Positions 1 to 40,855 of a stretch of DNA of 64,000 bases are shown here, one piece after another; the stretch's first letter is position 1; the number at the start of each line of letters is the position of its first letter. The stretch comes from Stylophora pistillata. Its lineage: Eukaryota. The stretch spans positions 224,398 to 288,397 of the forward strand of contig NW_019217822.1 in NCBI RefSeq assembly GCF_002571385.2, read 5' to 3'. Both the position numbers and the translations under genes were made by a program. Below the pieces are notes generated by a model, which saw nothing but the letters and a program-made list of their open reading frames with translations, had not been told where the DNA came from and made no database searches.

Positions 1-358
1 ATTTAATTTAATTTAATAGCTTTGTCAACCGGCAGGGACACCACAACAGCTAGCGCCAATTACTGCGGGCCCAATTAACCCACCCATCCCAACCCATGGG
101 AGGACATCCATCATACAGTAATCTTGTGTGTGGGAAATTAACATCTCCTACCCCAACCCTGCAGGAGACGGGACCTCCATTTATTCATCCCTATCCAAGA
201 AGACTAGAATATCTAACCATTTCTTGATGTTATAGAAAGGCAGCAAATTCTTCTCAATTATTTTAAGACCCCAAGTGTTGGTCTGGCCGGGGCTTGAACC
301 CTAGACCTCCTGCACAACAGTCCAGCGCTCTATCCATTGAGCTAACCGGGAGGCGGTT
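1..358 (-). mobile_element. tRNA-derived SINE (copy inside the duplication)
   Basis: A box TAGCTCAATGG, B box GGTTCAAGCCC, (TTAAA)n tail. Confidence 0.8.
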
Positions 359-417
359 GAAGCATTTTTCCCATTTTTTTCAAGTTCCCTTCAATCTTGA
401 AAGTAAACTATTCTTAC

Positions 418-535
418 CCAGTTGCCCAGCATTAAGGCCACAGGAGTAAACTTCATGTTTAGTGAAGAAAACTGAGTGATATCGCCCTGCTGCAGCCCCA
501 ACAATATCTTTGCCCCTCCACACCTTCAGGTGTAC
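418..535 (-). CDS. IBTK: Duplicate copy of the IBTK RCC1 exon (VHLKVWRGKDIVGAAAGRYHSVFFTKHEVYSCGLNAGQLG)
   Basis: Same sequence as 3677-3794 (offset 3259), with intact AG and GT sites. Confidence 0.85.
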
Positions 536-1949
536 CTGTCCAGTTGAACACAATTTTTAAGCCAAAAAATGAAATAAACTTTAAAAAACAATAGGCCACA
601 GGGCAGGCCATGGCCTAGGCCAGGTTTTGTCCACACCCCCCGAAAACTAAGACCTAAGACCTGCATTTGTGCTTGGCTAGCTACCTTCACAAGTTTACAA
701 TTTCAAGAGCAGAGGACATCGCTCGTTCGGCCCGTGTTTAGCAAGCTGCTTTAAGAAAACGAGAAATTCGAAAATAAAGGAAGAATCCAAAAGAAGGATT
801 AAATGAACGGACAACAAGTCGAGACACTATTCTGTTTGGCAATTCATTGCCCGATGTTGCACTGGATATTGACAGCTAGAATCGTATTGGTGAGCTAATA
901 GAAAGCCTTACAGCTTACGAAGTCCTGCTTGTAAAAAGCAAAAGAAACTTTAGCTTCAAAGAGCGTGCTAAAAATTTAACACGGTCACCATGTTGTACCA
1001 TGCAAAAATGCTGGCAAGATCTTAACACGTTCCTTTGTCTCTACCATGCAAAGGAAGACAATGGCTGCGATGTTAATGAGGCAGGTAACTAACACACAGC
1101 TAACGTGTTAAAAGCTAGTTCTTTTGTTTTAGCATGCGAGCGTGCAGTGTCCGTGCGCTCACCTTATTCCCTGAAATCCCGTGGAGGGTCACATAATTAT
1201 GATTGTGTAATTAAAAGAGGATTTAAAATTATGACTGAATGCAAACTTACCAGACACAATAAAAAGCTGTTTGCCAATAGCAAAATCCCTAACTGAGACA
1301 TGAAATAAATAAGAGGAACAAGCTAAGATGCCAGAGGATGAACATAAATTATACCATCAAACATGTTAATAATTGTGCAGTACCACTCAGAAATGCATTA
1401 ACCTAAAAATGGGATTTTTATTACTTCAGGGTTATTTACTAGAAAAAAACATCTTGAAACAAAGCGACACTTGAATTCATTCTGTTGTAAATAATTTAAA
1501 AAATTTTAACAATTATTTACCAAAGTGAAGGTGAATAGTGATGGATATCTACATGTACTGTGCCACAAACTGGCAAAGTAAATATCAACCACTTTCACCT
1601 GTCAGTAAATAACTGTTTTTTAGTATACACATTGTATGACACAGAAACCGAAAAAAAATCAGTCTGACTTGTACATTGTATTTCAATCTGTCATTATTCC
1701 GAAAAATAGTTGGAAATGAAGCTTTTGATTCACAATTTTGTCTCTTCTGCTCCTCAATTGTAAATAGTACTTGCTTTTCTCTTCTGAACTTGCCAATCAA
1801 ACTGTAGTAATATTATTATGTTGATGATATTTACCCATTATTCCATGAAAACTAATACTTGATGATGCTCAAAAATTAAACTGTGTGTGAAACATTGATT
1901 AATCAATATTACTGAGAGTGTACATTCTACAAACTAAAGAATCTCCTGA

Positions 1950-4900
1950 TTATGGACGAGGTAAAGCTGTTAATGAACCTGTGATTTGTCGGTTATGATG
2001 CCAAGAACATTCTCTCAAGCAACTGCCAGTAAACTTGGGCTTCCACTGGAACACCTGTTTTTAATTAGCAAATTAATATAAACAAGAATTATGTTAATGA
2101 TTACCAGTAGTAAGGACTTATTTTAAGCAACCTTAATTTTTTAAAGCTGAGCTAAAATAGAGAATATCATAGAAAATTATGCAATTTGTCTGCTTTTTAA
2201 TGGGAAAAACATTGTCAAATCAATTAATAAATATGCATTGTTAATGAAGCATGAGGTCTAGATGGCTGGATACGGGCAGAGTTCCTTGTATGTACTAAGG
2301 TCTTTGCAAATAATGATCTTGAACACCAAAAATAGTTGTGGATTGACTAACCCACCTTCCCTCTAGAGTTCAGCAATGTCACAGCAAGTTCATCAGCAAA
2401 CTTTTTGCTGACTTCTTGTGGAGATATCATATCAAGCTCACCTCCAACCACAGCCATATGAACCAAGTCAGTGAACCTTAAGGTGAAAGAAATGAAGCAA
2501 TTTAAAAAAAAATTTAACTATTCTTGACAACTTCTTTCATGCTAAGTGCATTACATTTTGGTAACAATGCCACGTATTTCTTACCTAGATATTATCTTGC
2601 GACAAATGTACAGGTTTAAAAGGAAGATATCTCCCTTGTCAGTTGCACATACTGTAGCTCCATCACTACAGGTCACTTTATTGATGGTGACATCTTTATC
2701 AGCCAATCCACTAACCTAAAGTAATAAAGACGCAAAAAAAACTTTTTATCTCTAGGATGAAGGAGCTGAGCAGAATGCAGTAGTAAATTAAAGAGCTTTA
2801 ATCTAGAAGGAAGAAAGCTGGCCTTCTCTCTGGCCTCAAATAGTTTCAGGTTCACTGAACATTAAACCACAGTGCAATGAATTAACCTATCAGAATAAAT
2901 GCAGGAATTTATAGTGGACACTGTAAAAGAAAAATTAATATTAGCTATTTTTTACAAATTGCAGTCCTCTGACTGTATTCAATACCTACAGTTCTGTAAT
3001 AAGAAGTTATTATCAATTAACATACAATGTATTTAATAAACAAAGAACAACTTTTAGTTACCTGACGAGGAAGTGTTTGGTATTCTTCTCCTTTTTGATG
3101 GCCTACAAAAAGAAAGTAATGGAGATAATTTATAGTGTTACATTGGACCAGTAATATTTTCAAATGATTAATCTAAAAAACAAGCACCACTCTCTATCAG
3201 GTACAAAAATTAAAACCTGACATGCCTTAGTGAACAGCTTTTTTTGCACAGTTGATTTAATTTAATTTAATTTAATAGCTTTGTCAACCGGCAGGGACAC
3301 CACAACAGCTAGCGCCAATTACTGCGGGCCCAATTAACCCACCCATCCCAACCCATGGGAGGACATCCATCATACAGTAATCTTGTGTGTGGGAAATTAA
3401 CATCTCCTACCCCAACCCTGCAGGAGACGGGACCTCCATTTATTCATCCCTATCCAAGAAGACTAGAATATCTAACCATTTCTTGATGTTATAGAAAGGC
3501 AGCAAATTCTTCTCAATTATTTTAAGACCCCAAGTGTTGGTCTGGCCGGGGCTTGAACCCTAGACCTCCTGCACAACAGTCCAGCGCTCTATCCATTGAG
3601 CTAACCGGGAGGCGGTTGAAGCATTTTTCCCATTTTTTTCAAGTTCCCTTCAATCTTGAAAGTAAACTATTCTTACCCAGTTGCCCAGCATTAAGGCCAC
3701 AGGAGTAAACTTCATGTTTAGTGAAGAAAACTGAGTGATATCGCCCTGCTGCAGCCCCAACAATATCTTTGCCCCTCCACACCTTCAGGTGTACCTGTCC
3801 AGTTGAACACAATTTTTAAGCCAAAAAATGAAATAAACTTTAAAAAACAATTATAAAAAGTGTGTGTGCGTGTGTGTGAATGTGCATGTGCATGTGTGAA
3901 GTTATTTCATTGTATCATTCTGTAATAACCAGTTTAACCTTTTGCACCATAACATATTCTCCACATTATTCTCCACACTATTCTTAATACATATCCTATG
4001 GTGCTGACAAGGAAAATTTGTGTAATGTTCAATATTAATCAAAAGCTTCTTTTGATTGAGTGGTGATCATTTCCTTTATTCTCGTGACCTTAATCCATGA
4101 TTTGGGGGTCATATTGTAAGGAGAAATTAGATACTGGTCTCTCTTGGGGGTCAAAGGGTTCATAAAATTAATGATACAAAAGTAATGTTTGCAGGGTTAC
4201 AGCTAAGAAATTACCCTGCCAGCTGAGATTTCAAGTGAGATGGCTCAAACGTGGTGAATGACTGGAAGTTTGTAACCTCAAAAGTGCCCGTTGTGCTTGT
4301 AACCAAGTGATCCCCTGCCAAAAAATCCAGCCAGTGATCGCCGCTTTTTCCTTGGGCAAATTTCACTGGCAGCTGGTGCTTAGCGACAACCCTGGTATGT
4401 TTTAATCTTCAGAGTTTACAAATAGTGAGTAAATAGTCACAAAACTATAATCACCATTTTTGGTAAAAGGCACTGTTTTGGCAGAGGTGACTGTCCATGT
4501 CCAAGCTGATGAGAATCATTTAGACCAAATGTGTAAACTGAGTGGCTGAAATAGAAAGAGAAGTTTTACTCAGTAAATTTGTCAATTAATAATACATTTT
4601 GTAATGTTTCAGGGACATACATGCAAGTAAAGTGCTGCATCCCATTCATTACTTATTGTATGGCAAATACTTTGTTAATGTTTCTCAAGTTTTAAAATGA
4701 ATATTTCAGAAAATCTTTTGTCGGAAATCCTATTCTCCACTTACTCATCTGTGACTACCACTGTATGATCCTGGCCAGCAGCAATTGACACACACTTGAT
4801 TCCCTGTAAAGCTTTTATCTCTTTTACCACCTACAGTGTACAAATTAACAAATAAAATATATTGAAATTAAGCAAAGCCTTGTACACTATGCTTTCTTTA

Positions 4901-7543
4901 TTTGGAATGAAGTAACAGTACGAGGGCCACAAATTTACCAACTGTTCTTAACTGTAATGTGTCACCTTCAGTAAAGTTATTTTTTTAAAGTGACACACAG
5001 CAGTTTCTGATAAAGAGTCTGGAGGCAAGGATGCTGGCAAGTTCATGAGGTTGTATAATGAGTTAGTTGAGTATAAAGGCAAAGTTAAAGATTGCAAAAA
5101 TCAACCTATTCTGTTAAAGTTTACTTTGATTGCAGTAACATCAAGGTAGTACATAGAGAAATACAGGTACAAGATTGTACTCTGCCTCAGATGGGACACA
5201 CCCAACTTCAATACAAGGCTACTCTCCTCACAATTTCACCAGGTTTCCCTGGCAGTTACACAAAATCCATTTTACTCCTGGGTGGACAAAGGCACTCTGA
5301 GAATTACAAACTGTACATGTAGATGTCTTGTTCAAGAACCCAACATAAAGATCTGGCTACAGCCAAATCATAGACTTTTTGATTCTACAACTAGCACACC
5401 AACATGAACCACTAGGCTCAGCTGCCTCTGTCCCATTTTAACCCTTTGGACTCTAACATCAGTATGCATATTCTCCATTCTGTTCTCTATACATTTCCCA
5501 ATGTGCTGACAAGGAGAATTTGTTACACAATCATGAGTTTCTTTAATTCATGATAATTTCCTTTTATTCTAATGTGACATGAATGGTTGATTCAGGGATG
5601 ATATAGCAAGGAGAAATTAAATGCTAATCACTATTAGGGGTGCGACAAAAATTAAAAGTTTATGAGTCGTGCCACTAACCAGATGAGTCCCTTCATTACC
5701 ATGCCCCAGTCTACCTCCTCTGCCGTGACCACAGGTGAAGACTCTGCCATCCATGCTCAGGAACACAGAGTGAAACTTACACATGACAACCTACAGTAAA
5801 TATAGAAACAATGTTCAAATGATTAAACTAATTACACAAACCAAAAATATTTTTTGTCATTCAATAATGCACGGCACAAATATGTTTGATATGTTCATGC
5901 CACTAATGACTGCACAATGTTTGTGGCAAATTTCAAACACACTACAGACTGTCTGTACCTCTTTGAAAGAAATTTTTGTGTCTCCTTGGACATTTTCAAC
6001 AATTTCAGGTGTATGTCTTGTGCTCTCATCTCTGTGACCAAGGGTGAAGTTTGTGTTGGATCCCCAGGTAAATAACTCCATTTGATAGGCTTGTAGAAAA
6101 GAAAAATCATTTAATAATCATACTGTATCCTCCAAGTCCTATCATTAGTATTATTTTTTAATAACTGTGCAATCAGGGTATAAGATTTACCTTCAGACAA
6201 AAGCTTGACATGATCCTTTGGAAAATGCCCTCGTCTTCCATTTAAATGACCAGTCCAGTAACTGCCATCATTTATGTGAATGTCCCTTATGATATCCCCA
6301 ACTTGTAACTGAAGTTCATCTTCCAGAGAGGATTCATACGGTGAAAAAACTTGAGCTTGAACTGTATAGCGTTGGCAAAAACACACAGTGAGTTATTAGT
6401 GATTGAAAAGATGTTTTCAATCACCATCTCCAAAGTGAAAGAAGAATAGCAGTCCAGAGTACTTGAAGCCAGAAATAATTATGTTCCTTCTTACAAACAA
6501 TCAATTTTGTTAAACTTAGAAGGGATTAGGGCACAGTGTTAACAGACAGCTTTTGAACCAAGTGGCCCATGCAACTGGATTATGTCTGGGAATAAATATT
6601 GCTATTTTCCCTGGCTAGGATGCAAGTCTACTGCAGGTTTTCCTCTCACCATTTTGTCAAGTCTCCCAGACAGTTACACATTGCCACAGTTTTTACTTGC
6701 ACTTCTGAACTGAGAGAGGCATTGAAAGAGCAAAGTTTCTGGCCCAAGGACACAAGACAATGGCCTGGAAAGGACTCAAAAGGGCTAAAACCCAAACTTC
6801 TCAATTTGGAATCCAGTGCAATGTGCTGATACATACAGCTGTCCTATACTCATGAATCGAACAACAACCTCTAAACATTTGTACTTTCAATTACCTTAAC
6901 TCTTATTTTTTTTCTTTTAAACTTCCGATTAAAAAAAGAATTAAAAAAGGAACAAAACCCACCTCCTTTTACAATTTGGAATGGTGCATCCAAGCGAATG
7001 AGATCCCATGGAGTGAGGCCTTCCTGGTCATACCAACCCAGATCTGAGCCAAGCTTTATAATGAACAATCAGGATGATAATTGAAAAAAAAAAAAAGTTG
7101 AGTTGTCCACCCTCCATTGGTTGTTTATCATGTTAACACTACTGGTTATGTTTGTTTTGACTTGGTTATGGTTTACTTGAAGGTAATTGTACATGTACTT
7201 TGATGTTACATTGGATCAACTTCAATTTTCAAAGTAGGCATACATCGGTTCCATATTAACATGAATCACTTCCAAGCATATATAGGCACATACACAAACT
7301 GTAAAATAAATGTAATAGCATATATCATTATCCAACTGTGCTTCGTAGAGTACAAATAATGTCCAAGACAAGTACAAACATCTTGCAGTATTATTTTGTA
7401 CTCCAGAGAATCATAAATAAATATCCACGAAATTCACCTGTACTGAAATAACAATTTGGCGTGTTAGATAATAAATCTCTTATCAAATGTTTGTTGTGTA
7501 GTAGTGCTGAATATTATGACGAAATTGTAGGGCGTCAAAATAT

Positions 7544-7577
<34 letters not shown>

Positions 7578-8066
7578 CAACAAATCGTTTAATAAGATAA
7601 TGTATTAATAAGCTTACATGTATGTGTTCTTACTCATAATATAACTTCATTTGTCCTAAAATACCTAATCGAAAAATAAAAAAAATTAATTGAAATCTTC
7701 TCGGTATATTACAAAAATGCATTTTATTTTCAACAGATAAGAGTGTGAAGTGTGTACCTGAATCAACTTGACAGCTGAGTCAAGAAATCCATAGAACAAG
7801 CTTCTGTGCAGAGCGGTCCAGCCGGACTCCAGATCTTTCGATCCCACGTCAAGACCTTGATCTTTCACCAGCCACTCCAAAATGTCGCCTTTGCCGCAAG
7901 ATGCTGCCACGTGTAAGGCATTCCGACCAAACTGATCCGACACGCGCGCAAAGTTCGAGCAGATTCGGGGCAAGATCGCTCGAATCGTTGCAGCATCTTC
8001 CTTCGTAATCGCGGATAGCACCAGATCGGCGTGCTTGGTAAGGCGACATTTTGGTGTGCATTCCAT
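1950..8066 (-). CDS. IBTK: Inhibitor of Bruton tyrosine kinase (ankyrin repeats, inserted SH3, RCC1 repeats); 5' portion only, BTB-encoding part not in window
   Basis: Phase-consistent GT-AG exons: 8066-7758, 7053-6963, 6361-6191 (SH3), 6089-5959, 5790-5680, 4830-4745, 4545-4455, 3794-3677, 3102-3062, 2715-2585, 2476-2356, 2054-~1980. Translation MECTPKCRLTKHADLVLSAIT..FGRNALHVAASCGK..DLESGWTALHRSLFYG..FTWGSNTNFTLGH..VVMCKFHSVFL..GHGRGGRLGHG matches the IBTK N-terminus as I recall it. The last exon runs into a stop at 1950-1952. Confidence 0.93.
3255..3617 (-). mobile_element. tRNA-derived SINE
   Basis: Pol III A and B boxes, body shared with 13182-13565, (TTAAA)n tail. Confidence 0.82.
3934..4160 (+). 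mobile_element. piggyBac-like MITE
   Basis: TTAACC(C/T)TT...AAAGGGTT ends; core catattctcca..gctgacaagga..ggagaaattag recurs about 7 times in the window. Confidence 0.7.
4191..4394. mobile_element. MITE with CAGGGTT..GCTAAG terminal inverted repeats
   Basis: Ends cagggttacagctaag and cttagcgacaaccctg; internal inverted ctgccag/ctggcag. Confidence 0.55.
5438..5640 (+). mobile_element. piggyBac-like MITE
   Basis: Starts TTAACCCTTT; same family as 3934-4160. Confidence 0.7.
6191..6361 (-). CDS. SH3-domain cassette exon within IBTK
   Basis: 171-nt exon with acceptor ctatacAG and donor GTaaat, phase 1 at both ends. Encodes VQAQVFSPYESSLEDELQLQVGDIIRDIHINDGSYWTGHLNGRRGHFPKDHVKLLSE, with SH3 motifs Y..DELxLxxGD, W.G and GxFP. 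Confidence 0.85.
7478..7597. repeat. Imperfect palindromic (hairpin) element
   Basis: Arms tcttatcaaatgtttgttgtgtagtagtgctga and tcagcgatactacacaacaaatcgtttaataaga. Confidence 0.6.
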
Positions 8067-8948
8067 TATTGATGGCTTGTTCGTGCACCATCGTAGCTAC
8101 AGAGCAAACATTACGATATATTTTGGCAAAACAGCCAAAAATACGAAGGTATTTACCTTTACAAACTAGCCGCCATTTTGAATCGACACGTAGCAAGGTA
8201 CATAAGTTTCGCGGGCTCTTTGTTGAGAAAATAAAACCTCCTCTCATTGGTCATGGTCAGGTGCTTTCCTTTTCGACCAATGAGAGGTATTGTAAGTTTA
8301 TTGATCGTTCTTAGAAACATCTGGTTCCTATAAACAATATGGAGGCTAATCGAAACAAACCAACAGAGTGAACTGCTCATTTTCCTACCGATCTTACTTC
8401 GGTATTCTGAGCGATTGTTCCACAAACAATTTGAGAAATTTTCGTAGTCTAAGTTTGTTCATGTCCCAGTTTTTAGAACATCGCGAAGAAACCGAGTAGT
8501 TCAAAACCGTATCAAAGTTTGTAGACGGAAGATTTCGACTGCGTGCATTCTAAATTAACAGTAATAAAATCATGGACAATAACAAGACTCAAACGTTATC
8601 ACGAAACCCAACAAGGTAAGCAAATTGGTAAGTTAATGTCACGAATTCACAGCGAGCGCAGAAAGTACGAAGCAATTGAATTGATATGTCATTCTGTCCG
8701 CGCCCTTAAGGGCTGCATGCCTGACGTGGACGGTTTCAGCCTGATCGTCCGGGAGAGAGTAGCTTGTCCTAACAAGAACTGTTGTTGGAAGTCGTGACTG
8801 ACATTTTGGCAACCTGAGAGGAAATCATCATCGACTCTGACGAAGTCCTGCGCTAAGGTTGTCGAAACTTCAGTCACTTCTGCCGACAACAGTCGGAATC
8901 AGGATGCAGGAATACAGGAATACAGGAATCAGAAATACAGGAATAAGA
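8067..8948. promoter_or_regulatory. Putative bidirectional promoter between IBTK and the uncharacterised plus-strand gene
   Basis: Head-to-head ATGs ~880 bp apart; CpG-richer than the flanks; YY1-type AAAATGGCGGC (minus, 8169-8179); inverted CCAAT pair at 8240-8252 and 8275-8287. Confidence 0.6.
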
Positions 8949-11900
8949 ATGGATGAATCACTCCGTTGTCCAAAGCAGTCTATCCTCTGGGCTCAGTAAT
9001 TGTTTTGCTTTCTCACTCGAGATGTTTACATGTACGTAGCATTTTTTTTTTATTCCATGTTTTTTTTAAGGAAACTTTTCCAGTCAACATTTCCACCAAT
9101 GATAGTGGACTATATGTCAAGTGCTGATTTGTCCAAACATCTGGATAGACAAATGTCAATTCATGCTGAAAAATATAAGGAACCAAAACAAGATGAAGAG
9201 TTTGATGAGGTACATGTACTGAAGCATCAAATCTCTTTCCTTTTTTCTTTGGGACTCTTCAACAAATATAGTTGTATCATTTTTTTACAAAAAAATGAGC
9301 ATGTAGCATCTGAAAATAAGAAAAATATATGTTATATTGTAAGTTCTTTTTTGTTAAGTGTGGAAAATGAAGAAGCAAGATGGTTAAAGGGCAGAGCACT
9401 GGCAAGGCGATCATTATTTTCTCCAGAAAAACCCCTTAACTTTATGGTGCCGGAAAATCTCCATCATTGTTATCAATAAAAAAACAGTTAGTTACCCCAT
9501 AGCAAGTGAAAAAAATATTGTGGTGCAAAATTACGCAGGTTAAAAAAATTGTACCTAGTGAAAAATAAAATTTACCTTTAAGTTAGAAAAAAAATTACCT
9601 GCAACATATATTAAGAGAGCTGTATATGATTATACCATATTTCCACGAATAAGTGCAAGGGTGCTTATTTAAATTTTGGGCTTAAAGGAGGGATGCTATT
9701 TGAAAAGAGGGTGCTCAATCAATGGGGCACTTACATTAAGGTAGCATAACAATAGGACTAAAATGATAAGAATAGATATCAGTCAATCAATCAATCAAAC
9801 TTTATTTAAAGAGGGTGACACTTAATAGTTAAAAAAACTAATGAACTTGTGGCCCTCCATAAACATTGTTACAATTTTAAAAAAAACTATTATAATTAAT
9901 AACCTAATTAAGAATTTAATTAAAACTTAATTAAAAATCACAATTTACAACATAAGTTACACATAGTTATGTTTTAGCACCTCTAACTGCAAGCACTTAG
10001 AGATAGAAATAACTGGAACAGAACATTAACTATTCTGAGCTGTACTGATTCTACTATAATTGAAGCTTAAAAAGTTGTAAATAAAGTAGCAATAGAAACA
10101 GTTTTTCCTTGTTTTCCTACCATTTAGAAAGTGAGGGAGCTTGGGGGGCACTTAATCTAGAGGGACCCTTGTACTTTCACATTATAGCCTATGTGGTGGG
10201 TGCTTATCCGAGCAAAGGAAATACGGACAGTATTTGAAAACCAGGAGTATTAAATTTTGGTAGAAGTGTGCTATCAGGCAAGCAGAGGGCATGGCTCACC
10301 TGCTAATTTTGGCCTCACTCATTTGGACTTTGTTATTTAAAGGTGAAAGAAAAGAAGAAGATTAAAAGAAAAGCCAGTAAGCTCAAGAAACTGCCATCTC
10401 AACATGGAATGATTCTTCAGGGATCTGATAAAAGACTTCAACAGAGCATGACAGTAGTGCAAGATGAGGAGGAAGAAGAACTGGACGAGGAGGAACAGGA
10501 ACATATCAGGAAGATGAAAGAAAAGGTAGTCTACATGAAATAAATAGCCACCTGTATAGAACTCTCTCTTGTATAAGATTAAAGAGATCAAGTTTTTTTA
10601 AGGACATATATGGTGTAAAAAGAAGTTATGAGATGGTGAAAAATTTTGATAGAGAATTATAATTACTACATATTTTAATTATTGTTCTGACTTTAATTTA
10701 AGTGTTACTGTAACAATAAAAATTATTATAAGATTTTTACCTTTTGAAAACTGGAGAGTAAAGAATGATACAGCTGTATATAACTGACTTTATGAATTGG
10801 AGGTATCAGGGGCCTACTTCTAGTAAAACTTGGAATCTAATGGACCCAAAAAGTAGATTTTTCTTTGCCATCTTTCATTGATTTCCCTATCAACAATTTG
10901 ACAGATTTGAAATTCAAACAATTACAAAGATATCAGGTACCAATGATTTAAGAAACAGAATGGACTGATGTTTGAGTGGAGACTCGCATTATTATTTCAT
11001 TGAATTAGATTTACTAGTAATAAAGATAATTAATTTTGTACTACATTTTAGGCGCATGATGAGTTGGTACAAGGTCTTCTGTTATTACGTGACTATTACA
11101 AAGCAGAATATAAAAAAGCCTTACAGGATAAAGTGGATCAGCAACGAAGAAGCCAGCAATTAAGGAAACTTAAATGTGAAGAAGAAATGAAAGCTGCAGA
11201 ACATCAACAGGTACATGAGGGGGGCATAGGGGTCTATTAGAAACTGCCACAAAAAAAAAAACATCAGTTCTAAAACTGCAAAATTGCAAAAACTTTGATC
11301 AAAACCAAATAGCTCAGTAAAACCTTTTAAAGAAGATCAATTTTCACATCCCAGTTATCAAAAACCAGTGTAATCGACATGATACAGTGGTGACAAGTAA
11401 AACATACAGAGGTTTTGTGGATCGAGGTACATAATTGCCACTCATAATTCAAATTAAGAGAAACCTGGAACACAATTTGAAAAACTGAACACCTCATAAG
11501 ACACCAATCCAAAAACAGCATTTAACTTAGCATTTTTGACAAAAACCAAAAGCCAAATGTTAAAAAAACAGAAAATCAGCAATGAACACCAAAACTGAAA
11601 AACTGAAGTTTTTGAGCACAAAAGCAGAAAAAACCGAGCTAAAAATAGCCAAAACCAGAAAACCAAAAATCCCAATATCCCCCCTCATACGTTTAGAGAT
11701 TCCATATTATATTAACTTTACATTTAATTTTACTGGTATTTGCTACCCAGAGTGTTTAGAATTCTGTGGACTTTCATAAGTATGTATACAGCTATATGTA
11801 TTATTCAATTACATTAAAAATTAATTATATCCACAGGAAGTAATGCAGCATAAAGTTGTTCGCAAGCTTCCAAGGTCCATTGTCATCAATGATGTCCAAT

Positions 11901-40237: not shown

Positions 40238-40855
40238 GAAAACTNNNNNNNNNNNNNNNNNNNNNNNNNNNNNNNNNNNNNNNNNNNNNNNNNNNNNNNN
40301 NNNNNNNNNNNNNNNNNNNNNNNNNNNNNNNNNNNNNNNNNNNNNNNNNNNNNNNNNNNNNNNNNNNNNNNNNNNNNNNNNNNNNNNNNNNNNNNNNNNN
40401 NNNNNNNNNNNNNNNNNNNNNNNNNNNNNNNNNNNNNNNNNNNNNNNNNNNNNNNNNNNNNNNNNNNNNNNNNNNNNNNNNNNNNNNNNNNNNNNNNNNN
40501 NNNNNNNNNNNNNNNNNNNNNNNNNNNNNNNNNNNNNNNNNNNNNNNNNNNNNNNNNNNNNNNNNNNNNNNNNNNNNNNNNNNNNNNNNNNNNNNNNNNN
40601 NNNNNNNNNNNNNNNNNNNNNNNNNNNNNNNNNNNNNNNNNNNNNNNNNNNNNNNNNNNNNNNNNNNNNNNNNNNNNNNNNNNNNNNNNNNNNNNNNNNN
40701 NNNNNNNNNNNNNNNNNNNNNNNNNNNNNNNNNNNNNNNNNNNNNNNNNNNNNNNNNNNNNNNNNNNNNNNNNNNNNNNNNNNNNNNNNNNNNNNNNNNN
40801 NNNNNNNNNNNNNNNNNNNNNNNNNNNNNNNNNNNNNNNNNNNNNNNNTACGCTT

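What the first reader, a model, noticed from the sequence alone, without database searches (positions are those of the whole stretch)
6191..6361. IBTK carries an in-frame SH3 cassette exon between the ankyrin and RCC1 regions
Seen: a symmetric phase-1 exon encoding one whole SH3 domain. Both inclusion (..IVKG-VQAQ..LSE-AYQMELFTWG) and skipping (..IVKG-AYQMELFTWG) keep the frame. Established: human IBTK is ANK-RCC1-BTB, a CUL3 substrate adaptor with no SH3, and phase 1-1 modules are typical of exon shuffling. Inference: an undescribed ANK-SH3-RCC1-BTB adaptor that may switch on recruitment of PxxP substrates by alternative splicing. The WW motif reads YW and the PxxY motif reads PKDH, so ligand specificity may be atypical.
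Basis: partly seen in the sequence, partly recalled or inferred. Interest (0 to 1): 0.75.

Follow-up and report, generated by a model that had tools for sequence, protein, structure and literature searches.

The report
Coral IBTK gene carries SH3 exon
A coral's version of the IBTK ubiquitin-ligase adaptor gene has an extra exon, included in every transcript seen, that encodes an unusual SH3 binding domain shared with other corals and a sea anemone but missing from fish IBTK.

Summary
Window 6361..6191 (minus strand) is a 171-nt, phase 1-1, AG/GT-bounded exon that encodes one whole SH3 domain (Pfam SH3_2 E 4.7e-9). It lies between the ankyrin and RCC1 exons of an IBTK orthologue.

RNA from 4 of 4 runs joins exon 2 to the SH3 exon and the SH3 exon to the RCC1 exon. 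The skipping joint 6963>6089 was listed in 0 of 4 runs, and read depth on the exon equals that of its neighbours. It therefore looks constitutive, not a cassette switch.

The exon is conserved with the same borders in 26 other 90%-identity clusters (dN/dS 0.24-0.41). It is collinear with ANK and RCC1 exons on two metagenome contigs. It is also present in the RefSeq model XP_031553998.1, "inhibitor of Bruton tyrosine kinase-like" of the sea anemone Actinia tenebrosa (ANK-SH3-RCC1-BTB). Fish IBTK (Sparus aurata) has no SH3.

So this is a hexacorallian architecture already held in public protein models, though I found no paper that describes it. The domain is atypical: relatives keep Ser, Tyr and Cys/His where canonical SH3 domains have the binding Tyr, Trp and Tyr. 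Its nearest kin is the first SH3 domain of CIN85/CD2AP-type adaptors. I could not survey taxa beyond Hexacorallia.

The parts
8067..8187 (-). 5' leader of the IBTK-like mRNA, with three upstream ATGs at 8176, 8111 and 8091. The last one is out of frame and overlaps the main start codon.
   Evidence: RNA contigs start at 8172 (X1) and 8187 (X6). The sequence was read.
7758..8066 (-). Exon 1 coding part, 103 codons, ankyrin repeats. It ends in phase 0.
   Evidence: Ank_2 E 4e-9; joint 7053>7758 in 4 of 4 runs; 57% identical to Actinia IBTK-like residues 2-104 and 52% identical to fish IBTK residues 8-108.
6963..7053 (-). Exon 2, 91 nt, the linker after the ankyrin repeats. It ends in phase 1 (..FQIVKG).
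   Evidence: joints 7053>7758 and 6361>6963..
6191..6361 (-). The SH3 exon: 171 nt, phase 1-1, one whole atypical SH3 domain.
5957..6089 (-). Exon 4, 133 nt, the first RCC1 blade (AYQMELFTWGSNTNFTLGH..).
   Evidence: RCC1 E 2.8e-6; joints 6089>6191 and 5788>5957; matches Actinia residues 193-235 and fish residues 144-171.
5678..5788 (-). Exon 5, 111 nt, RCC1 repeat.
   Evidence: contig pieces and a joint. RCC1 E 2.5e-5; 81% identical to Actinia and 78% identical to fish.
2350..4565 (-). Further RCC1-region exons lie inside the stop-free stretches 4565-4440, 3815-3642, 2715-2584 and 2517-2350. Their exact borders were not determined.
   Evidence: RCC1 hits; the stretches are collinear on L004; they are collinear with Actinia residues 301-426 and fish residues 251-376.

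Best explanation
The stretch is a constitutive coding exon of the coral orthologue of IBTK, which in human is a CUL3 substrate receptor. The exon adds one complete SH3 domain between the N-terminal ankyrin repeats and the RCC1 propeller, giving ANK-SH3-RCC1-BTB. The domain is old: both coral sub-clades seen here and a sea anemone share it, so it goes back at least to the common ancestor of Scleractinia and Actiniaria. It is under purifying selection and is absent from a fish IBTK. It is not a recent shuffle, because the best paralogous SH3 exon in the same genome is only 47% identical. Its nearest kin are the first SH3 domains of CIN85/CD2AP-type adaptors.

Shown: the exon, its splicing, its conservation, the architecture and the atypical residues.

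Inferred: the domain serves as an extra protein-contact module on the substrate-recognition half of a CRL3-IBTK ligase. Ser, Tyr and Cys/His replace the canonical Tyr, Trp and Tyr of the proline-binding groove, and these replacements are conserved. It therefore probably does not bind classical PxxP peptides but a non-canonical ligand or another part of IBTK itself. I put about 0.5 on an intermolecular non-canonical ligand.
For: Exon and frame. SH3 profile matches above the curated cut-offs.

Splicing: joints 7053>7758, 6361>6963, 6089>6191 and 5788>5957 appear in 4 of 4 RNA runs. One contig in each of X1 and X6 (1583 and 5492 nt) carries all five exons. X24 has 7, 7, 8 and 8 joint reads, and X21 has 3, 3, 2 and 7. 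X24 depth is 6.6-8.8 on the SH3 exon against 6.9-9.2 on exons 4 and 5. All X24 first mates on these exons lie on the + strand, as expected for a minus-strand mRNA in a stranded library.

Conservation: 27 clusters (one of them the window's own) reach E<=7e-24 at 53-84% identity, and one more is a fragment. In one search the similarity starts at V(Q/H)A and stops at the donor G, and Y35, W36, G45 and F47 are invariant. In one search, dN/dS is 0.24, 0.41 and 0.30 against L004, L005 and L006, with the AG/GT sites kept.

Synteny: L005 holds exon 1, exon 2 and the SH3 exon in order, and L004 holds exon 2, the SH3 exon and six RCC1-region pieces in order. Seven SH3 ORFs share their 'longest contig' length with an exon-1 ORF.

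Naming and architecture: searches give Actinia tenebrosa XP_031553998.1 'inhibitor of Bruton tyrosine kinase-like' with Ank 28-108, SH3 137-187 (SH3_9 E 8e-10), RCC1 196-414 and BTB 600-662. Sparus aurata IBTK has Ank, RCC1 and BTB but no SH3. In one search the window's exons are collinear with both proteins, and the SH3 exon matches Actinia 136-191 (51% identity) and nothing in the fish.

Kinship of the domain. The 13 IBTK SH3 domains form one clade (SH-aLRT 99) next to CIN85/CD2AP-type SH3-A (support 82).

Human IBTK as a CUL3 receptor with ANK, RCC1 and BTB: PMC4447969 and PMC5133848 (abstract starts) and PMC2490745 (passages).
Against: Read depth is low: 15 inclusion joint reads in X24 and 5 in X21. 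The tool lists a joint only from 3 reads, so a skipping isoform of up to roughly 10-20%, or one limited to a tissue, stage or stress, is not excluded.

The BTB half is weak at exon level in this genome (BTB E 8.9e-4, 19.9 bits against a cut-off of 20.5). In addition, 7143 bases of the gene next to the window read N. CUL3 binding is inferred from the human protein.

The function of the SH3 domain is pure inference. Crk SH3-C, one of the best PDB matches, binds no PxxP ligand at all (PMC2689226 passages).

Confidence: 0.82

Rival explanations
1. The SH3 exon is an alternatively spliced cassette, and its inclusion or skipping switches recruitment of PxxP substrates on and off.
For: Skipping would keep the frame, because the exon is phase 1-1 and 171 nt long. 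Symmetric exons are the kind that can be skipped (PMC6335736, listing and abstract start). The read depth is too low to exclude a minor isoform.
Against:: 0 of 4 runs list a 6089>6963 joint at min_share 2. Both assembled transcripts include the exon. Depth on the exon equals that of the flanking exons. The canonical PxxP groove residues are replaced.
Confidence: 0.08
2. The SH3 domain is an ancestral animal (or eumetazoan) feature of IBTK that vertebrates lost. It is not a gain within Anthozoa or Cnidaria.
For: The domain is old: it is shared by corals and a sea anemone and lies on a long branch away from any paralogue. The intron at the end of exon 1 is shared by coral-like and fish-like exon-1 ORFs, so the gene structure is ancient. 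Exon-1 homologues of unknown, more distant taxa exist, but their SH3 status could not be read.
Against: The profile search fell from E 7e-24 straight to unrelated SH3 domains. It gave no intermediate hits, such as might come from more distant taxa. This is weak evidence, because ORF callers need a start codon and only 8000 candidates were scored. Fish IBTK has none.
Confidence: 0.3
3. The domain is a ligand-less, structural or autoinhibitory SH3, as in Crk SH3-C. It packs against the ankyrin repeats or the RCC1 propeller and does not recruit partners.
For: The best PDB E-values are to Crk SH3-C, with a near-identical C-terminal half. Crk SH3-C lacks a binding groove and acts within the molecule (PMC2689226 passages). 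Three groove positions are replaced and the replacements are conserved.
Against: By single-domain score and by tree, the nearest kin is the ligand-binding CIN85/CD2AP SH3-A type. The acidic RT-loop residues (LEDEL) and the groove Pro and second Tyr are kept. dN/dS of 0.24-0.41 fits either reading.
Confidence: 0.35
4. The stretch is a stray SH3 fragment, a mis-assembly or part of another, nested gene, and does not belong to IBTK.
For: None found. The only oddity nearby is an exact 592-bp duplicate at the window's start, next to a block of N.
Against: Spliced reads join it directly to the IBTK exons on both sides in 4 of 4 runs. The same order is seen on L004 and L005 and in the Actinia protein.
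Confidence: 0.01

Closest known systems
Actinia tenebrosa 'inhibitor of Bruton tyrosine kinase-like', XP_031553998.1 (RefSeq model, 805 aa)
   Same: The order ANK-SH3-RCC1-BTB is the same. All tested window exons are collinear with it. Its SH3 is 51% identical over 57 aa and has the same Ser, Tyr-Trp and Pro-Lys-x-Cys/His positions.
   Different: It comes from a sea anemone, not a coral. The model ends after the first BTB region at 805 aa, so it may be partial. It is a computed annotation, and I found no paper on it.
Vertebrate IBTK (human IBTKalpha in the literature; Sparus aurata A0A671WLP2 tested here)
   Same: Ankyrin repeats, RCC1 repeats and BTB domains occur in the same order. Exon 5 is 78% identical and exon 1 is 52% identical. 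The human protein is a CUL3 substrate receptor for PDCD4 and eIF4A1 (abstract starts of PMC4447969 and PMC11090508).
   Different: It has no SH3 domain. In the fish, the exon 2 homology ends near residue 136 and the exon 4 homology starts near residue 144.
First SH3 domain (SH3-A) of CIN85/SH3KBP1 and CD2AP adaptors
   Same: These are the best single-domain matches outside the orthologues, at 47 bits against 82 bits. P0032 is confirmed as this type. The best paralogue in the same genome is of this type. It is the sister group in the quick tree, with support 82.
   Different: Identity is at most 47%. These domains keep the canonical Trp-Trp and Pro-x-Asn-Phe/Tyr (print-out). The CIN85/CD2AP-like SH3-A exon in this genome does not end where the IBTK exon ends, so no shared exon borders support a direct shuffle.
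Crk C-terminal SH3 and Caskin SH3 (atypical SH3 domains)
   Same: Key groove residues are replaced. The C-terminal half is very like that of Crk SH3-C. Passages of PMC2689226 and PMC7830187 describe such domains as binding no PxxP ligand.
   Different: They sit in different proteins and a different domain context. The IBTK SH3 keeps an acidic RT loop. It is not in their clade by single-domain score.

Membership tests
SH3 domain (Pfam SH3_1 / SH3_2 / SH3_9) | Profile match above the curated gathering score over the whole domain | tested here: met
   SH3_2 36.2 bits against 21.8, SH3_9 32.8 against 30 and SH3_1 27.5 against 22.9. Nearly the full model length is covered.
SH3 domain (Pfam SH3_1 / SH3_2 / SH3_9) | Five-stranded beta-barrel fold | not testable with these tools
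Canonical PxxP-binding SH3 | Conserved groove aromatics: both Tyr of ALYDY, the first Trp of WW, and the Tyr of PxxY (Src Y90, Y92, W118 and Y136, from PMC7830187 passages) | tested here: not met
   alignments to Crk N-SH3 and CIN85 SH3-A show Trp replaced by Tyr35 and the PxxY Tyr replaced by His51. The first ALYDY Tyr is replaced by Ser7. Searches show Tyr-Trp invariant in 27 of 27 rows and Cys/His at position 51 in relatives. The placing of the motif names is partly recalled.
IBTK orthologue | N-terminal ankyrin repeats followed by RCC1 repeats, collinear with named IBTK proteins | tested here: met
   Searches give the Pfam matches. One search shows exon-by-exon collinearity with Actinia IBTK-like and Sparus IBTK, both named by their sources.
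IBTK orthologue | Two BTB domains after the RCC1 region | tested here: inconclusive
   The single-exon pieces are short. BTB reaches E 8.9e-4 (19.9 bits against 20.5) and BACK reaches E 0.04-0.05. However, pieces of L003 match the BTB regions of the fish (746-776, 849-882) and of Actinia (580-770) in order. Part of the gene reads N.
IBTK orthologue | Binds CUL3 and acts as a substrate receptor | not testable with these tools
   This is known for human IBTK only (PMC4447969 abstract start).
Cassette (alternatively skipped) exon | Transcripts that join the flanking exons directly | tested here: not met
   the joint 6089>6963 is listed in 0 of 4 runs, while inclusion joints appear in 4 of 4. Low depth leaves a minor isoform open.
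CIN85/CD2AP-type SH3-A | Groups with SH3-A of three-SH3 adaptors and keeps their Trp-Trp and Pro-x-Asn-Phe motifs | tested here: not met
   It is the nearest kin but forms a separate long-branch clade (SH-aLRT 99). The motifs are changed, and identity is at most 47%.

The most novel reading that the evidence does not exclude
Hexacorallian (perhaps all cnidarian, or ancestral animal) CRL3-IBTK ligases carry a dedicated, non-canonical SH3 module. Its conserved Ser/Tyr/Cys groove would recognise a ligand class other than PxxP, giving IBTK a substrate or regulator channel that vertebrates lost. A minor, condition-dependent skipping isoform that removes the module is still possible.
Probability: 0.3. 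Interest if true: 0.5.

Novelty: new variant of a known kind. Interest (0 to 1): 0.3.

Why it matters
IBTK is a little-studied CUL3 substrate receptor tied to translation control and stress survival in human cells. The finding shows that its domain make-up is not fixed across animals: corals and a sea anemone carry an extra, conserved, atypical SH3 domain on the substrate-recognition side. This gives a concrete handle for asking what IBTK binds in cnidarians, through pull-downs with one small domain. It is also a clean example of a whole domain carried on a symmetric phase 1-1 exon. It is not a new kind of system, because the architecture already sits in public gene models and the splicing-switch idea is not supported.

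Tried and rejected
1. The search of protein representatives with the 57-aa exon. The 150 listed hits were dominated by multi-SH3 proteins whose scores add up. Only three single-domain rows were useful (P0001, P0092, P0093), so no full-length IBTK appeared. This was a poor use of the single job.

2. The search for homologous proteins, all 3 searches. Because of the length window they returned only single-exon ORFs from genomic contigs, without organism names. A cross-phylum survey was therefore not possible.

3. Taxon names. Paper searches for the contig prefixes found nothing. The listing of cluster members gave names for only 2 of the 26 clusters asked about across.

4. The protein-atlas search with P0310 listed IBTK clusters but shows at most three Pfam families per cluster, so it says nothing about SH3.

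5. Exon-shuffling donor. The CIN85/CD2AP-like SH3-A exon in this genome continues past the domain, so it does not share exon borders with the IBTK exon. The tree has only 57 columns and support of 82, so the donor remains a lead only.

6. P0279 is a canonical SH3 ORF that also ends in VKLLSE|G and is 47% identical over 43 aa. It falls outside the IBTK clade, so I rejected it as a distant orthologue, though its context could not be read.

7. Rfam search on 5500-8300 found nothing.

8. The careful tree did not finish within 288 s, so the quick tree is what I report. Four of 68 rows were dropped for having under 80 filled columns (P0224, P0227, P0230, P0252).

9. For the tree I used 9 of the 26 SH3 relatives, the 9 own-genome matches that had loci (of 20 non-self matches), 3 of the 150 representative hits, and P0279.

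Supplements of PMC2490745 (IBTK orthologue alignments) were not opened and might list invertebrate sequences.
Full report
THE OBSERVATION. On the minus strand the window reads ...ctatacag|TTCAAGCT ... CTGAAG|gtaaatc. The exon is therefore 6361..6191, 171 nt long, with AG and GT at its ends. With one flanking base on each side it translates without a stop to 57 residues, VQAQVFSPYE...KLLSE. Exon 1 holds 309 coding bases and exon 2 holds 91. Three Pfam SH3 models match above their curated cut-offs over nearly their full length (SH3_2 E 4.7e-9, SH3_9, SH3_1). In the PDB, 324 sequences match at E<=1, led by Crk C-terminal SH3 and CIN85/SH3KBP1 SH3-A. The exon before it belongs to an ankyrin region and the exon after it to RCC1 repeats.

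IS IT EXPRESSED, AND IS IT A CASSETTE? The window comes from a coral: the runs are labelled coral metagenome or organism A. I laid two assembled poly(A) RNA runs (X1, X6) and two raw-read RNA runs of 2026 (X21, X24), from four studies, on window 5500-8300. The joints 7053>7758, 6361>6963, 6089>6191 and 5788>5957, all with GT..AG on the minus strand, appear in 4 of 4 runs.
- One contig in X1 (1583 nt) and one in X6 (5492 nt) carry all five exons.
- X24 has 7, 7, 8 and 8 joint reads, and X21 has 3, 3, 2 and 7.
- The skipping joint 6089>6963 is listed in 0 of 4 runs, although I set the listing threshold to 2 reads in 100.
- X24 depth on the SH3 exon (6.6-8.8) equals that on exons 4 and 5 (6.9-9.2).

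The exon therefore behaves as constitutive. The tool lists a joint only from three reads and the depth is low, so a minor or condition-specific skipping isoform cannot be excluded. Nothing supports one.

IS THE GENE IBTK? Exon 1 is ankyrin. The stretches at 6089-5957, 5788-5678, 4565-4440 and 3815-3642 are RCC1. The gene runs off the window's left end, where 7143 bases read N, and I left these alone. Beyond them, pieces of L002 and L003 give a weak BTB hit (E 8.9e-4, just under the cut-off) and weak BACK hits.

Names came from the listing of cluster members. The cluster of exon-1 ORF P0211 also holds XP_031553998.1, [quoted passage not shown] (P0310, 805 aa). The cluster of P0220 holds UniRef100_A0A671WLP2, "Inhibitor of Bruton tyrosine kinase", Sparus aurata (P0294, 1201 aa). 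Exon-by-exon blastp shows that all tested window exons are collinear with both proteins. Exon 1 is 57% and 52% identical to them, exon 5 is 81% and 78% identical, and the L003 pieces fall in their BTB regions. The gene is the coral IBTK orthologue.

HOW FAR IS THE SH3 SHARED? Pfam on the two named proteins gives:
- the sea anemone: Ank 28-108, SH3 137-187 (SH3_9 E 8e-10, with SH3_1 and SH3_2 also above cut-off), RCC1 196-414, BTB 600-662;
- the fish: Ank, RCC1 from about residue 140, BTB, and no SH3.

The window's SH3 exon matches anemone residues 135-191 at 51% identity and nothing in the fish. In the fish, the exon 2 homology ends near residue 136 and the exon 4 homology starts near residue 144.

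Among unnamed assemblies, a profile of the exon found 29 proteins at E<=0.001 out of 8000 scored candidates. Of these, 27 reach E<=7e-24 (one is the window's own species), one is a fragment of the same family, and one is an unrelated canonical SH3. All are single-exon ORFs. Their similarity begins at V-Q/H-A and ends at the donor-site G, which means they share the same exon borders. Seven of them share a 'longest contig' length with an exon-1 ORF (3186204, 387901, 677610, 506265, 2999951 and 815038; 581120).

Three metagenome contigs were fetched. L005 carries exon 1, exon 2 and the SH3 exon in order. L004 carries exon 2, the SH3 exon and six RCC1-region pieces in order. L006 carries the SH3 exon at its very end but no RCC1 exon in the 9 kb that follow, and its G+C content is different. 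dN/dS against the three contigs is 0.24, 0.41 and 0.30, with the AG and GT sites kept.

In a quick tree of exon-1 homologues (64 of 68 rows kept), all seven rows for which an SH3 had been seen by then lie in one clade of 24 rows (SH-aLRT 98) that has two sub-clades. The anemone's row lies just outside it, within a 29-row clade (support 89). The fish-like rows and others are further away. I read the 24-row clade as stony corals, but the rows carry no names.

WHAT KIND OF SH3? By the alignments to Crk N-terminal SH3 and CIN85 SH3-A, three groove positions are replaced. The ligand-binding Trp is Tyr35 here, the Tyr of the Pro-x-x-Tyr motif is His51, and the first Tyr of the ALYDY motif is Ser7. 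The naming of these motifs is partly recalled. The Src numbering Y90, Y92, W118 and Y136 comes from passages of PMC7830187. Tyr35-Trp36 is invariant in 27 of 27 aligned rows. Position 51 is Cys in most relatives and in the anemone, and Ser7 is kept in most rows. The acidic RT-loop stretch LEDEL is kept.

The C-terminal half resembles Crk SH3-C. Passages of PMC2689226 describe that domain as lacking a PxxP groove and acting within the molecule. By single-domain score, however, the nearest non-orthologues are the first SH3 domains of three-SH3 proteins of about 550-700 aa (47 bits against 82 bits for the orthologues), and one of these is confirmed as CIN85/CD2AP-like.

In the coral's own genome the exon has no close copy. 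The best other SH3 exons are 43-47% identical, and three of them lie within 4 kb on contig C9 in a CIN85/CD2AP-like gene. In a quick tree of 26 SH3 domains, the 13 IBTK ones (anemone included) form one long-branch clade (SH-aLRT 99) beside the CIN85/CD2AP SH3-A rows (support 82). That gene's SH3-A exon does not share the IBTK exon's 3' border. A CIN85/CD2AP-type donor is therefore a lead, and the event is ancient. All paralogues keep Trp-Trp and Pro-x-Asn-Phe/Tyr, so the IBTK groove changes are derived and then conserved.

HOW IT MOST LIKELY WORKS.
- Shown: a constitutive, conserved, selected SH3 domain sits between the ankyrin repeats and the RCC1 propeller of IBTK in corals and a sea anemone.
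- From the literature on the human protein: IBTK is a CUL3 substrate receptor with ANK, RCC1 and BTB domains (PMC4447969, PMC5133848 and PMC11090508, abstract starts in the listing; PMC2490745 passages).
- Inferred: the SH3 domain adds a contact surface on the substrate-recognition half. Given its conserved non-canonical groove, it binds something other than classical PxxP peptides (about 0.5), or it packs against IBTK itself as Crk SH3-C does (about 0.35).

IS IT NEW? Four paper searches found no description of an SH3 domain in any IBTK. These were IBTK with SH3 domain, RCC1 and ankyrin, whose one hit mentions only the SH3 domain of BTK; IBTK with invertebrate and SH3 (0 papers); IBTK with cnidaria (0 papers); and IBTK with ortholog, Drosophila and domain architecture (0 papers). 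The architecture is, however, already in a RefSeq model. I rate it a new variant of a known kind and of modest interest. Phase 1-1 symmetric exons as the usual vehicle of exon shuffling is established knowledge; for PMC6335736 I saw only the listing and abstract start.

LIMITS. There is no structure prediction. Most relatives have no genomic context or organism name. Junction depth is low. Part of the gene is masked. The supplements of the papers were not opened.

Noticed in passing
window 8067-8187 (minus strand): The 5' leader of the coral IBTK mRNA has three upstream ATGs: 8176 (5 codons), 8111 (4 codons) and 8091. The last is out of frame and runs about 80 codons past the main ATG at 8066. 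The same overlapping frame is open in a relative (P0228 / L005). Mammalian IBTKalpha is translationally controlled by upstream ORFs (PMC4019499 passages), so uORF control may be ancient.
   Followed up: partly
window 7327-7600 (intron 1 of the IBTK gene): RNA contig depth reaches the thousands (up to about 20,000 summed), with many 'opposite strands' joints and many loose ends in all four runs. This looks like an abundant, transcribed repeat or inverted-repeat element. Rfam gave no match.
   Followed up: partly
window 1-592 and 3260-3851: This is an exact 592-bp duplicate with 0 mismatches that contains one RCC1 exon (556-383 = 3815-3642). The first copy abuts a block of 7143 N just left of the window. 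It is probably an assembly artefact at a gap rather than a real exon duplication.
   Followed up: partly
L006 (OFEP01000211.1), 1-9160: The SH3 exon sits at the very end of this contig, but none of the RCC1 exons follows in 9 kb, and G+C is 47% against about 37% in the window. The contig is either chimeric or has a large insertion in the intron.
   Followed up: partly
L005 3668-3965: In this relative, exon 1 matches in two reading frames (3668-3781 and 3672-3965), a one-base frame change relative to the window. The same layout is seen in P0228, a cluster of 19 sequences. The cause could be a sequencing error, a different start codon or a broken copy.
   Followed up: no
G000 contig C9:1566531-1570625 (L007, L013, L014) and C514:30875-34717 (L010, L012): Two genes each have three whole-domain SH3 exons within about 4 kb. 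The C9 gene is CIN85/CD2AP-like by PDB matches. They are the closest paralogues of the IBTK SH3 in this genome.
   Followed up: partly
P0279 (ENA, contigs up to 4.7 kb): This ORF holds a canonical SH3 domain (Trp-Trp, Pro-Thr-Asn-Tyr) and ends with the same VKLLSE|G as the IBTK exon. It is 47% identical over 43 aa but falls outside the IBTK clade. Its gene context could not be read.
   Followed up: partly
window 40245-40848: A run of 604 N, which was left untouched.
   Followed up: no
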